A DNA stretch of 21,612 nt from Octopus sinensis (taxonomy: Eukaryota). The notes under the pieces are model-generated. The model ran no database searches. It saw only the letters and a list, made by a program, of their open reading frames with translations, and was not told the DNA's origin. Position numbers and translations under genes: made by a program. The DNA lies in contig NW_021823661.1 in the NCBI RefSeq assembly GCF_006345805.1, positions 1 to 21,612 on the forward strand, written 5' to 3'. Shown here piece after piece: positions 2,827 through 2,874 of the stretch (position 1 is its first letter; each line of letters opens with the position of its first letter).

Positions 2827-2874
2827 GTCTTACAGCTGTTTCCGGGATAGTTTATATATCCCTTCATCAGAGAC
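2827..2874 (-). ncRNA. Minimal type I hammerhead ribozyme with canonical core (PLE-type)
   Basis: Minus strand reads GTCT-CTGATGA-A-GGGATA-TATAAAC-TATCCC-G-GAAAC-AGCT-GTA-AGAC: stem I GTCT/AGAC, core CUGAUGA and GAAA, 6-bp stem II, palindromic stem III ACAGCTGT, GUA triplet. Predicted cut between 2831 and 2830. Confidence 0.8.

What the first reader, a model, noticed from the sequence alone, without database searches (positions are those of the whole stretch)
2827..2874. Core-intact minimal hammerhead ribozyme on the same strand as the CARD-LRR gene
Seen: all conserved core nucleotides (CUGAUGA, GAAA, GUA triplet), closed stems I and II, and palindromic stem III ACAGCUGU; only an A.G mismatch at the base of stem II departs from the ideal. 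Established: PLE terminal repeats carry such minimal type I HHRs, and palindromic stem III allows dimeric cleavage. Inference: if the gene's pre-mRNA runs about 6.4 kb past the big exon, this could cut the nascent transcript (intronic cleavage, termination or recursive processing).
Basis: partly seen in the sequence, partly recalled or inferred. Interest (0 to 1): 0.75.

Follow-up and report, generated by a model that had tools for sequence, protein, structure and literature searches.

The report
Transposon-borne minimal hammerhead in octopus intron
The hammerhead-ribozyme motif is really there, but it belongs to one old, truncated copy of a short retrotransposon-like repeat found thousands of times in the Octopus vulgaris genome, so it is an ordinary example of a known kind and probably does not cut the host gene's RNA.

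Summary
On the minus strand, 2874->2827 reads GUCU|CUGAUGA|A|GGGAUA-loop-UAUCCC|G|GAAA|CAGCUGU|A|AGAC. It has a full hammerhead core, a 4-bp helix I, a 6-bp helix II and a palindromic 8-nt helix III, with cleavage predicted at 2831/2830. It is the only such motif in the window; 5 of 1000 shuffles give any loose match and none an equal one. No Rfam hammerhead model scores it.

It is not a host-gene device. It lies about 70 nt from the 3' end of a 256-bp repeat copy (3015->2760). The genome (Octopus vulgaris, 2.7 Gb) holds 1,579 exact copies of the core plus helix III. The repeat shows 5' truncation, head-to-head inverted pairs and microsatellite insertion sites, as Penelope-like elements (PLEs) do. 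The genome also holds thousands of GIY-YIG PLE ORFs and two other hammerhead-bearing repeat families.

The 'A.G mismatch' is a family trait; subfamilies carry A/A, A/G, U/U or A/U there.

Published single PLE minimal hammerheads show no detectable self-cleavage.

Verdict: a new member of a known kind, of low interest.

The parts
2827..2874 (-). Minimal type I hammerhead motif. Helix I is 2874-2871 paired with 2830-2827. Core CUGAUGA is 2870-2864. Extra A is 2863. Helix II is 2862-2857 paired with 2849-2844, with loop 2856-2850. Extra G is 2843. GAAA is 2842-2839. Palindromic helix III ACAGCUGU is 2839-2832. A17 is 2831. Predicted cleavage is between 2831 and 2830.
   Evidence: Sequence read. 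The descriptor scan finds it as the only hit in the window, with 5/1000 shuffles giving a loose hit and 0/1000 an equal one. The dimer cofold gives the double-hammerhead as MFE. No Rfam hammerhead hit.
2760..3015 (-). One 5'-truncated (short-form) copy of a dispersed non-autonomous repeat, called 'H' here. The hammerhead occupies H positions 142-189, about 70 nt from the element's 3' end (...CUGUUAAU).
   Evidence: The own-genome search gave 1,864 first-look candidates, with scored copies 85-92% identical. Copy boundaries, 5' truncation and inverted partners come. Per-column comparison with 35 copies is. Longer copies reach at least 850 bp.
2579..2762 (.). (TA)n microsatellite abutting the 3' end of the repeat copy. 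It is the preferred insertion context of the family.
   Evidence: Tandem Repeats Finder gives period 2 with 93.5 copies. Most other copies are also flanked by (TA)n or other microsatellites.
9277..10749 (-). Large coding exon (aa 3-493) of the host gene, named by NCBI 'LRR and PYD domains-containing 2-like' in Octopus vulgaris. It has a weak CARD match and an LRR_6 match. An AG acceptor lies before 10749 and a GT donor begins at 9276.
   Evidence: Pfam scan. 100% identical protein found. tblastn and k-mer mapping. Splice-site sequences.
1..9276 (-). Intron of the host gene that runs off the start of the contig. It contains the repeat copy in sense orientation.
   Evidence: No residues 494-730 are encoded in the window. 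The next exon is on G000:C3169:8692-9363 behind an AG acceptor.

Best explanation
The motif is a Penelope-like-element (PLE) type minimal hammerhead. It is carried in the conserved 3' module of a short, non-coding, non-autonomous retroelement family of Octopus vulgaris. The window holds one old, 5'-truncated, solo copy that landed in a (TA)n microsatellite inside an intron of a CARD-LRR gene, by chance in sense orientation. What is shown: the motif, its repeat membership, the copy numbers, the insertion architecture, the intronic sense position, and the thermodynamic preference of two copies for the double-hammerhead. What is inferred: in the element's own life cycle the hammerhead acts, if at all, as a dimer on multimeric or paired element transcripts, and rare tandem loci with 295-1050 bp periods do exist. 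Also inferred: the family is mobilised in trans by one of the genome's many GIY-YIG PLEs. As a lone monomer with only a 2-bp/tetraloop helix III, the window copy is expected to be catalytically idle or very weak. It is expected to have no designed role in processing the host pre-mRNA.
For: Repeat membership and abundance. The own-genome DNA search gave 1,864 first-look candidates. The exact 23-mer across helix II, GAAA, helix III and helix I occurs 428 times, against 0 for the control. The pattern CTGATGA-N14-26-GAAACAGCTGTA occurs 1,579 times, against 1 for the control. The hammerhead state in the window is the family majority state at every helix and core position except one position, at the junction of loop II and helix II.

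PLE hallmarks. Copies have variable 5' truncation and a fixed 3' end. Copy number falls 1,864 -> 532 -> 173 candidates walking upstream. Head-to-head inverted partners occur in 8 of 30 loci. In the coordinate lists there are 11 head-to-head pairs, no tail-to-tail pairs and 3 tandems. Flanks are microsatellites, mostly (TA)n. These features are described for PLEs in PMC8557442.

Architecture. It matches the published PLE min-HHR: helix II of 6-7 bp, helix I of 4 bp, a nucleotide between A9 and helix II, and a palindromic helix III (PMC4209133).

Genome context. The genome holds 4,846 candidate GIY-YIG hits, with C-terminal endonuclease ORFs up to 883 aa. The main autonomous family carries its own U3-A8 min-HHR-like motif about 100-140 nt before a (TA)n junction. 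A third repeat family has Rfam-passing minimal hammerheads (RF00163 up to 48 bits) with the same 4-bp helix I and 8-nt AC-NNNN-GU helix III.

Shared module. A roughly 150-nt 3' module, the hammerhead plus its tail, is shared by families whose bodies differ.

Dimer and solo status. The dimer MFE is the double hammerhead, -27.9 against 2 x -10.6 kcal/mol. No second motif lies in the window or in the 8.7 kb before the next exon. Single PLE min-HHRs gave no detectable cleavage in vitro (PMC4209133).
Against: No Rfam hammerhead model scores this motif or 14 related copies, even at E<=10. There is an extra nucleotide on both sides of helix II, so either G10.1-C11.1 is displaced from the core or the closing 'pair' is A.G. 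Cleavage of this variant has not been shown. No RT or endonuclease ORF was found joined to this repeat: there is no sequence similarity to 30 PLE loci and no Pfam domain in 894-bp arms. The PLE link therefore rests on architecture and not on homology. The 37 copies show no covariation beyond chance, as expected for neutrally decaying copies, so there is no evolutionary proof of the fold within the family. No expression data were available. Trans-dimerisation with other family transcripts cannot be excluded.
Confidence: 0.75

Rival explanations
1. One reading: the sense-oriented intronic hammerhead cuts the nascent CARD-LRR pre-mRNA, giving intronic cleavage, premature termination or recursive processing, and so regulates the gene.
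For: The motif is in the intron and in sense. The core is intact. Thousands of family copies could supply partner RNAs in trans, and the dimer is thermodynamically favoured. From memory, host-co-opted intronic and 3'-UTR hammerheads exist in amniotes (HH9/HH10) and in rodent Clec2.
Against: It is one of at least 1,579 equivalent copies of a repeat. The copy is old, about 7% from the family majority. No cis partner lies in about 18 kb of readable intron. Single PLE min-HHRs do not cleave detectably, and dimers only weakly (PMC4209133). Helix III as a monomer is 2 bp plus a tetraloop. Nothing ties the motif to this gene specifically.
Confidence: 0.07
2. A hammerhead by descent only. In this family the two extra nucleotides flanking helix II (A/G, A/A, U/U) have inactivated catalysis. 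The conserved 3' module then survives as a structured recognition or priming signal for the mobilising reverse transcriptase, not as a ribozyme.
For: No Rfam hammerhead score in any copy. The flanking positions vary freely between subfamilies without keeping a Watson-Crick pair. The whole 150-nt module, not only the ribozyme, is what is shared between families. Craig et al. note that PLE clades lacking hammerheads proliferate well (PMC8557442).
Against: All 11 core nucleotides, the GUH site, the palindromic helix III and all three helices are retained in several subfamilies that have diverged elsewhere. The axolotl HHR_Amex2 has a U.U mismatch at the base of helix II and still self-cleaves, and does so better as a dimer (PMC7229834). 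Tandem loci that would allow cis dimers exist.
Confidence: 0.17
3. A chance match of a short descriptor in AT-rich DNA, with no relation to hammerheads.
For: The monomer fold energy is unremarkable (z = -1.08). There is no Rfam hit.
Against: 0 of 1000 shuffles match equally well. The motif is the ancestral state of a large repeat family that shows PLE-like insertion behaviour in a genome rich in PLEs and other hammerheads.
Confidence: 0.01

Closest known systems
Minimal hammerheads (min-HHRs) of metazoan Penelope-like elements (Cervera & De la Pena 2014, PMC4209133)
   Same: Type I topology, a 4-bp helix I, a long 6-7 bp helix II, an unpaired nucleotide between A9 and helix II, and a palindromic, nearly loop-less helix III that implies dimeric action. 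They are mostly dispersed as solo motifs from truncated elements, with some pairs on opposite strands 100-700 bp apart, and number thousands per genome.
   Different: This motif has an additional nucleotide between helix II and G12, so the closing opposition is A.G (A.A, U.U or A-U in sister subfamilies). No RT-EN ORF was found attached to this family. No within-family covariation was seen.
Animal non-LTR retrozymes (Cervera & De la Pena 2020, PMC7229834; Li et al. 2026, bioRxiv 10.64898/2026.07.22.740005)
   Same: Short, AT-rich, non-coding, hammerhead-bearing non-autonomous elements, proposed to derive from and depend on PLEs. Dispersed monomers are common, and about 43% lie in introns in Xenopus. 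A few tandem loci of this family exist, with periods of 295, 948 and 1051 bp.
   Different: Retrozymes are defined by tandem arrays with canonical hammerheads that have loop-loop contacts. Here the great majority of copies are solo or head-to-head and the hammerhead is of the minimal type. Circular RNAs were not tested.
Axolotl HHR_Amex2 (PMC7229834)
   Same: A natural type I hammerhead with a non-Watson-Crick opposition (U.U) at the base of helix II and a 2-bp/tetraloop helix III. It is weak as a monomer and much better as a dimer.
   Different: Amex2 has loop 1-loop 2 tertiary contacts and sits in 350-bp tandem repeats. Its activity is measured, whereas the activity of this motif is not.
Sm-alpha SINE hammerhead of Schistosoma (Ferbeyre et al. 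1998, as cited in PMC4209133; details from memory)
   Same: A hammerhead embedded in a highly repeated short interspersed element.
   Different: Sm-alpha carries a canonical hammerhead and has a SINE-type structure. Here ARAGORN finds no tRNA gene in the window, the copy included, and the insertion architecture is PLE-like.
Host-conserved intronic hammerheads HH9/HH10 of amniotes and the Clec2 3'-UTR hammerhead (Rfam RF02275/RF02277; from memory)
   Same: A hammerhead in sense orientation inside a protein-coding transcription unit.
   Different: Those are single-copy, orthologously conserved motifs with stable helices and tertiary contacts. This one is a multi-copy transposon relic with a minimal helix III and no Rfam match.

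Membership tests
Hammerhead ribozyme, type I (Rfam RF00163 and clan) | Conserved core C3 U4 G5 A6 N7 G8 A9 ... G12 A13 A14 and a cleavage triplet N-U-H | tested here: met
   CUGAUGA, GAAA and GUA are all present at 2870-2864, 2842-2839 and 2833-2831.
Hammerhead ribozyme, type I (Rfam RF00163 and clan) | Three helices around the core, with the open end in helix I | tested here: met
   Helix I is 4 bp and helix II 6 bp (7 bp in the family majority). Helix III is 2 bp plus a tetraloop, or an 8-bp intermolecular palindrome.
Hammerhead ribozyme, type I (Rfam RF00163 and clan) | Score at or above the family's gathering threshold with the covariance model | tested here: not met
   No hammerhead hit at gathering score, or at E<=10 on 501 nt, 71 nt, or 7 related loci. 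Other hammerheads of the same genome reach 34-48 bits.
Hammerhead ribozyme, type I (Rfam RF00163 and clan) | G10.1-C11.1 pair stacked directly on the A9.G12 pair | tested here: inconclusive
   A G-C pair closes helix II, but it is separated from the core by one extra nucleotide on each side (A2863, G2843). Subfamilies have A/A, A/G, U/U or A/U at these positions.
Hammerhead ribozyme, type I (Rfam RF00163 and clan) | Site-specific self-cleavage giving 2',3'-cyclic phosphate and 5'-OH ends | not testable with these tools
   This needs in vitro transcription or RNA end mapping.
PLE minimal hammerhead (PMC4209133) | Long helix II (6-8 bp), short helix I (4-5 bp), and no or minimal helix III | tested here: met
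   The helices measure 6-7 bp, 4 bp, and 2 bp plus a 4-nt palindromic loop.
PLE minimal hammerhead (PMC4209133) | [quoted passage not shown] | tested here: met
   A at 2863. It is A in most subfamilies and U in one.
PLE minimal hammerhead (PMC4209133) | Palindromic 15.2-16.2 / loop 3, permitting a dimeric active fold | tested here: met
   ACAGCUGU is palindromic. The cofold MFE of two copies is the double hammerhead, -27.9 against 2 x -10.6 kcal/mol.
PLE minimal hammerhead (PMC4209133) | Location in the terminal repeat (pLTR) / 3' region of an element encoding RT plus GIY-YIG endonuclease | tested here: inconclusive
   The motif lies about 70 nt from the 3' end of a non-coding repeat that shows PLE-type truncation, head-to-head pairs and (TA)n targeting. 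No RT/EN ORF is attached, and there is no similarity to 30 PLE loci. Longer copies could not be fetched.
PLE minimal hammerhead (PMC4209133) | Consensus families with covariation and compensatory changes in the helices | tested here: not met
   Among 37 distinct copies, 92.9% of cells are paired but covariation equals the shuffled expectation, with 2 double changes against 1.6 expected. Only between-family comparison shows different helices on the same architecture.
Animal non-LTR retrozyme (PMC7229834) | Head-to-tail tandem repeats of 150-450 bp, each with a hammerhead | tested here: not met
   The window copy is solo. In the coordinate lists only 3 same-strand neighbour pairs were seen (295, 948, 1051 bp), against 11 head-to-head pairs and hundreds of solo copies.
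Animal non-LTR retrozyme (PMC7229834) | Expression as self-cleaved linear and circular RNAs | not testable with these tools
Host-conserved intronic hammerhead (HH9/HH10 type) | Single-copy motif conserved at an orthologous gene position | tested here: not met
   The motif is multi-copy, with at least 1,579 core-intact copies genome-wide. Orthologous loci in other species could not be examined.

The most novel reading that the evidence does not exclude
This octopus family may represent a distinct, active hammerhead variant. In it a non-Watson-Crick opposition (A.A, A.G or U.U) is inserted between the catalytic core and helix II. With thousands of sense copies in transcribed introns, family RNAs might then pair in trans through the palindromic helix III and cleave host pre-mRNAs such as this CARD-LRR transcript at a low but biologically relevant rate.
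Probability: 0.05. Interest if true: 0.6.

Novelty: new member of a known kind. Interest (0 to 1): 0.2.

Why it matters
As it stands, the finding adds an Octopus vulgaris family to the already large catalogue of PLE-type minimal hammerheads. A detailed 2026 repeat annotation of this species does not mention ribozymes (PMC13282606). The finding also shows that covariance-model scans miss this variant completely. There are two points of modest wider interest. First, the two nucleotides flanking helix II vary between subfamilies (A/A, A/G, U/U, A/U), which recalls the U.U mismatch of the active axolotl HHR_Amex2. This is a natural test set for how much the core/helix II junction tolerates. Second, a conserved 150-nt 3' module is shared by families with different bodies, which fits the view that animal hammerhead repeats are non-autonomous parasites of PLEs. 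For the CARD-LRR gene itself, nothing indicates a regulatory role.

Tried and rejected
Rfam scans. I ran cmscan at gathering score, and at E<=10 on 501 nt, 71 nt and 7 related loci. None gave a hammerhead hit, only spurious miRNA matches on (TA)n and (TG)n arrays.

Monomer fold. The MFE is an alternative fold and is not significant.

Search for an attached RT/endonuclease. H has no similarity to 30 GIY-YIG loci. No Pfam domain was found in ORFs of the 894-bp inverted arms of L072. ARAGORN finds no tRNA gene in the window, the copy included.

Walking upstream to a full-length element. Two steps worked. The full-length element and its autonomous partner therefore remain unidentified.

Covariation. 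The test on 37 copies gave nothing beyond chance.

Host gene locus. The look-up of encoding contigs held no record for the host protein. The gene structure was instead pieced together from two contigs.

Pattern search.

Repeat 'X'. In 10 of 30 loci H is flanked by an older repeat 'X'. I considered that H is nested in X. L072 shows that the 5' part of X is contiguous upstream sequence of a longer element. The 3' part (about 170 bp, on one side only) is unresolved. It could be a long PLE-style tail or a tandem junction.

Full report
1. The observation.

The minus strand of the window from 2874 to 2827 reads GUCU CUGAUGA A GGGAUA UAUAAAC UAUCCC G GAAA CAGCUGU A AGAC. Every conserved hammerhead core nucleotide is present. 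Helix I (GUCU/AGAC) has 4 bp and helix II has 6 bp. Helix III is the 8-nt palindrome ACAGCUGU. In a monomer it forms 2 bp plus a tetraloop, and between two molecules it forms an 8-bp helix.

A type-I descriptor scan that I wrote finds this as the only hit on either strand of the 21.6-kb window. Of 1000 dinucleotide-preserving shuffles of the window, 5 gave any loose hit and none gave one with a helix II of 6 bp or more.

Rfam gives no hammerhead hit at gathering score. It also gives none at E<=10 when only 501 nt or 71 nt are searched. The monomer MFE is a different fold and is no better than shuffles.

2. What carries the motif.

A 141-nt query around the motif finds 1,864 first-look candidates in the window's own 2.7-Gb genome. 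The 40 scored copies are 85-92% identical. Alignment of 30 fetched loci defines a repeat copy in the window at 3015->2760 (256 bp, minus strand), here called H.

H has a fixed 3' end (...CUGUUAAU) that abuts a microsatellite, usually (TA)n. In the window this is the array at 2579-2762. The 5' ends are variable. The hammerhead occupies positions 142-189 of this copy, about 70 nt from the 3' end.

Eight of the 30 loci carry a second, inverted copy joined head to head, often truncated at nearly the same point.

Genome-wide counts:
- The exact 23-mer spanning helix II, GAAA, helix III and helix I occurs 428 times, against 0 for the reversed control.
- The pattern CTGATGA-N14-26-GAAACAGCTGTA occurs 1,579 times, against 1 for the control.
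- In the coordinates listed by those two calls there are 11 close head-to-head pairs, no tail-to-tail pair and three same-strand neighbours.

Fetching some of these showed three things. One locus (L072) has 894-bp inverted arms, so the element is at least about 850 bp long and the window copy is a truncated form. There are three tandem loci, with periods of 295, 948 and 1051 bp. No recognisable protein domain lies in the arms. Candidate numbers fall from 1,864 to 532 to 173 when walking upstream, which is the gradient expected for 5'-truncating retrotransposition.

A module of roughly 150 nt, the hammerhead plus a tail of about 70 nt, is shared at 70-85% identity by families whose upstream bodies differ.

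3. The genome and its other hammerheads.

The large exon ORF is 100% identical to an Octopus vulgaris protein. This genome has thousands of GIY-YIG matches (4,846 candidates), with the endonuclease at the C-terminus of ORFs up to 883 aa. These are canonical EN+ Penelope-like elements.

The main autonomous family ends in a (TA)n junction, sometimes with a tail of about 38 nt. About 100-140 nt before that junction it carries UUGAUAA-GGUUC...GAAC(C/U)-GAAAC-AUGU. This is a minimal hammerhead-like motif with the U3-A8 core covariation described for Cercyon PLEs (PMC4209133).

A third repeat family carries minimal hammerheads that do pass Rfam RF00163, with 8 hits over the cut-off and scores up to 48 bits. 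They have the same 4-bp helix I and the same 8-nt AC-NNNN-GU helix III. This family occurs in tandem (431 bp) and inverted arrangements, and its 3' end is ...CUGUUA followed by (TA)n.

The features of H are exactly those published for PLEs and their hammerheads (PMC4209133, PMC8557442):
- a hammerhead near the 3' end;
- 5' truncation;
- head-to-head inverted copies;
- microsatellite targeting;
- a long helix II and a short helix I;
- a nucleotide between A9 and helix II;
- a palindromic helix III.

[quoted passage not shown] I therefore read H as a non-autonomous, PLE-associated retroelement. The PLE link rests on architecture only.

4. The 'A.G mismatch'.

The 100 sequences listed show several subfamilies. 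All keep the core, helix III and the helix II sequence GGGAUAU/AUAUCCC. They differ in loop II and in the two nucleotides that flank helix II. These are A/G in the window's subfamily, A/A in the commonest, U/U in another and A/U in another.

In the window's subfamily the G lies in a CpG and has decayed to A in 11 of 35 copies. So the mismatch is a family trait. It can be read as a symmetric one-nucleotide insertion between core and helix II. Equivalently, it is a non-Watson-Crick 10.1/11.1 opposition.

This explains the missing Rfam score. Whether it abolishes catalysis is unknown. The axolotl HHR_Amex2 has a U.U mismatch at the base of helix II and still cleaves, better as a dimer (PMC7229834).

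Among 37 distinct copies there is no covariation beyond chance: 92.9% of cells are paired, and there are 2 double changes against 1.6 expected. This is what neutrally decaying copies should show, and it neither supports nor refutes the fold.

5. The host gene.

The exon at 10749->9277 (minus strand) encodes residues 3-493 of a 730-aa protein, 'LRR and PYD domains-containing 2-like'. Pfam gives a weak CARD match and an LRR_6 match. An AG acceptor precedes the exon and GTAAC follows it at 9276.

Residues 492-715 are encoded on another contig of the same assembly, C3169:8692-9363, behind an AG acceptor. Window 9276->1 is therefore intron, and the hammerhead lies 6.4 kb into it, in sense.

However, no second copy of the repeat or of the motif exists in the rest of the window. 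None exists in the 8.7 kb that precede the next exon.

6. How it most likely works.

Two 48-nt copies co-fold into the classical double hammerhead as the MFE. That fold has an 8-bp intermolecular helix III with helices I formed in trans, at -27.9 kcal/mol against 2 x -10.6 for two monomers. This agrees with the published view that such motifs act as dimers on multimeric element transcripts.

In vitro, single PLE min-HHRs showed no detectable cleavage, and dimers or trimers cleaved only weakly (PMC4209133). The window copy is solo and about 7% diverged from the family majority. The most likely situation is that it is a passenger with no role in the host transcript.

7. Novelty and verdict.

Minimal hammerheads in PLE-derived repeats are known to occur by the thousand in metazoan genomes. 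This is a new family in a species whose repeat annotation does not mention ribozymes, so it is a new member of a known kind. The only mildly unusual aspects are the variable non-canonical opposition next to helix II and complete invisibility to Rfam models. Interest is low (0.2).

Noticed in passing
L045, L047, L048, L052, L056-L057, L060-L061, L063-L070 (G000 PLE loci), about 800-1000 nt downstream of the GIY-YIG ORF stop: The main autonomous C-terminal-GIY-YIG PLE family of this genome carries a minimal hammerhead-like motif with the U3-A8 core covariation (UUGAUAA-GGUUC...GAAC(C/U)-GAAAC-AUGU). It lies about 100-140 nt before a (TA)n junction. Subfamilies close helix II with G-C or G.U. Some copies have an extra tail of about 38 nt after the 3' end.
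   Followed up: partly
L031, L033-L037, L039-L040 (e.g. G000:C16:25146363 and 25146794): A separate repeat family has Rfam-passing minimal hammerheads (RF00163, 34-48 bits), in tandem (431-bp period) and inverted arrangements. Its 3' end is ...ACUGUUA followed by (TA)n, which resembles the 3' terminus of the window's repeat.
   Followed up: partly
L078 (G000:C1:9311500-9313000), L079 (C1:38728800-38731000), L082 (C1:161780700-161782900): These are rare head-to-tail tandem loci of relatives of the window's repeat, with periods of 295, 948 and 1051 bp. L078 and L079 have a core-intact hammerhead in each unit; the two L082 units match the repeat, but their hammerhead core is not intact. They are candidates for cis double-hammerhead processing or circular RNAs.
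   Followed up: partly
L002, L008-L010, L012, L016, L021, L023-L024, L029, just 3' of the repeat; L072:180-334: A segment of about 170 bp ('X3') follows the 3' end of the repeat in about a third of loci. In the inverted dimer L072 it is on one side only, and it ends in another microsatellite. It may be a long PLE-style tail or a tandem junction. This is unresolved.
   Followed up: partly
window 9277-10749 (-) and G000:C3169:8692-9363 (+): The host CARD-LRR gene is split between two contigs of this assembly. The window starts at base 1 of contig C132, inside the intron.
   Followed up: yes
window 2579-2762 and many other microsatellites (5822-5896, 8624-8736, 18226-18345 and others): (TA)n and (TG)n arrays give spurious sub-threshold Rfam matches to mir-297, mir-3149 and mir-1277. 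These are composition artefacts.
   Followed up: yes
window 14490-14917 and 20886-21611: Long trinucleotide arrays, (AGT)n about 143 copies and (TGG)n about 248 copies, create stop-free ORFs in several frames. Two of these ORFs (14281-14952 and 20740-21612, both minus strand) were scanned and gave no Pfam match.
   Followed up: partly
window 3760-4223: A 184-bp unit is repeated 2.5 times at 97% identity. Related sequence appears in the flank of an unrelated PLE locus (L056), so it is probably one of the abundant octopus SINE-like repeats.
   Followed up: no
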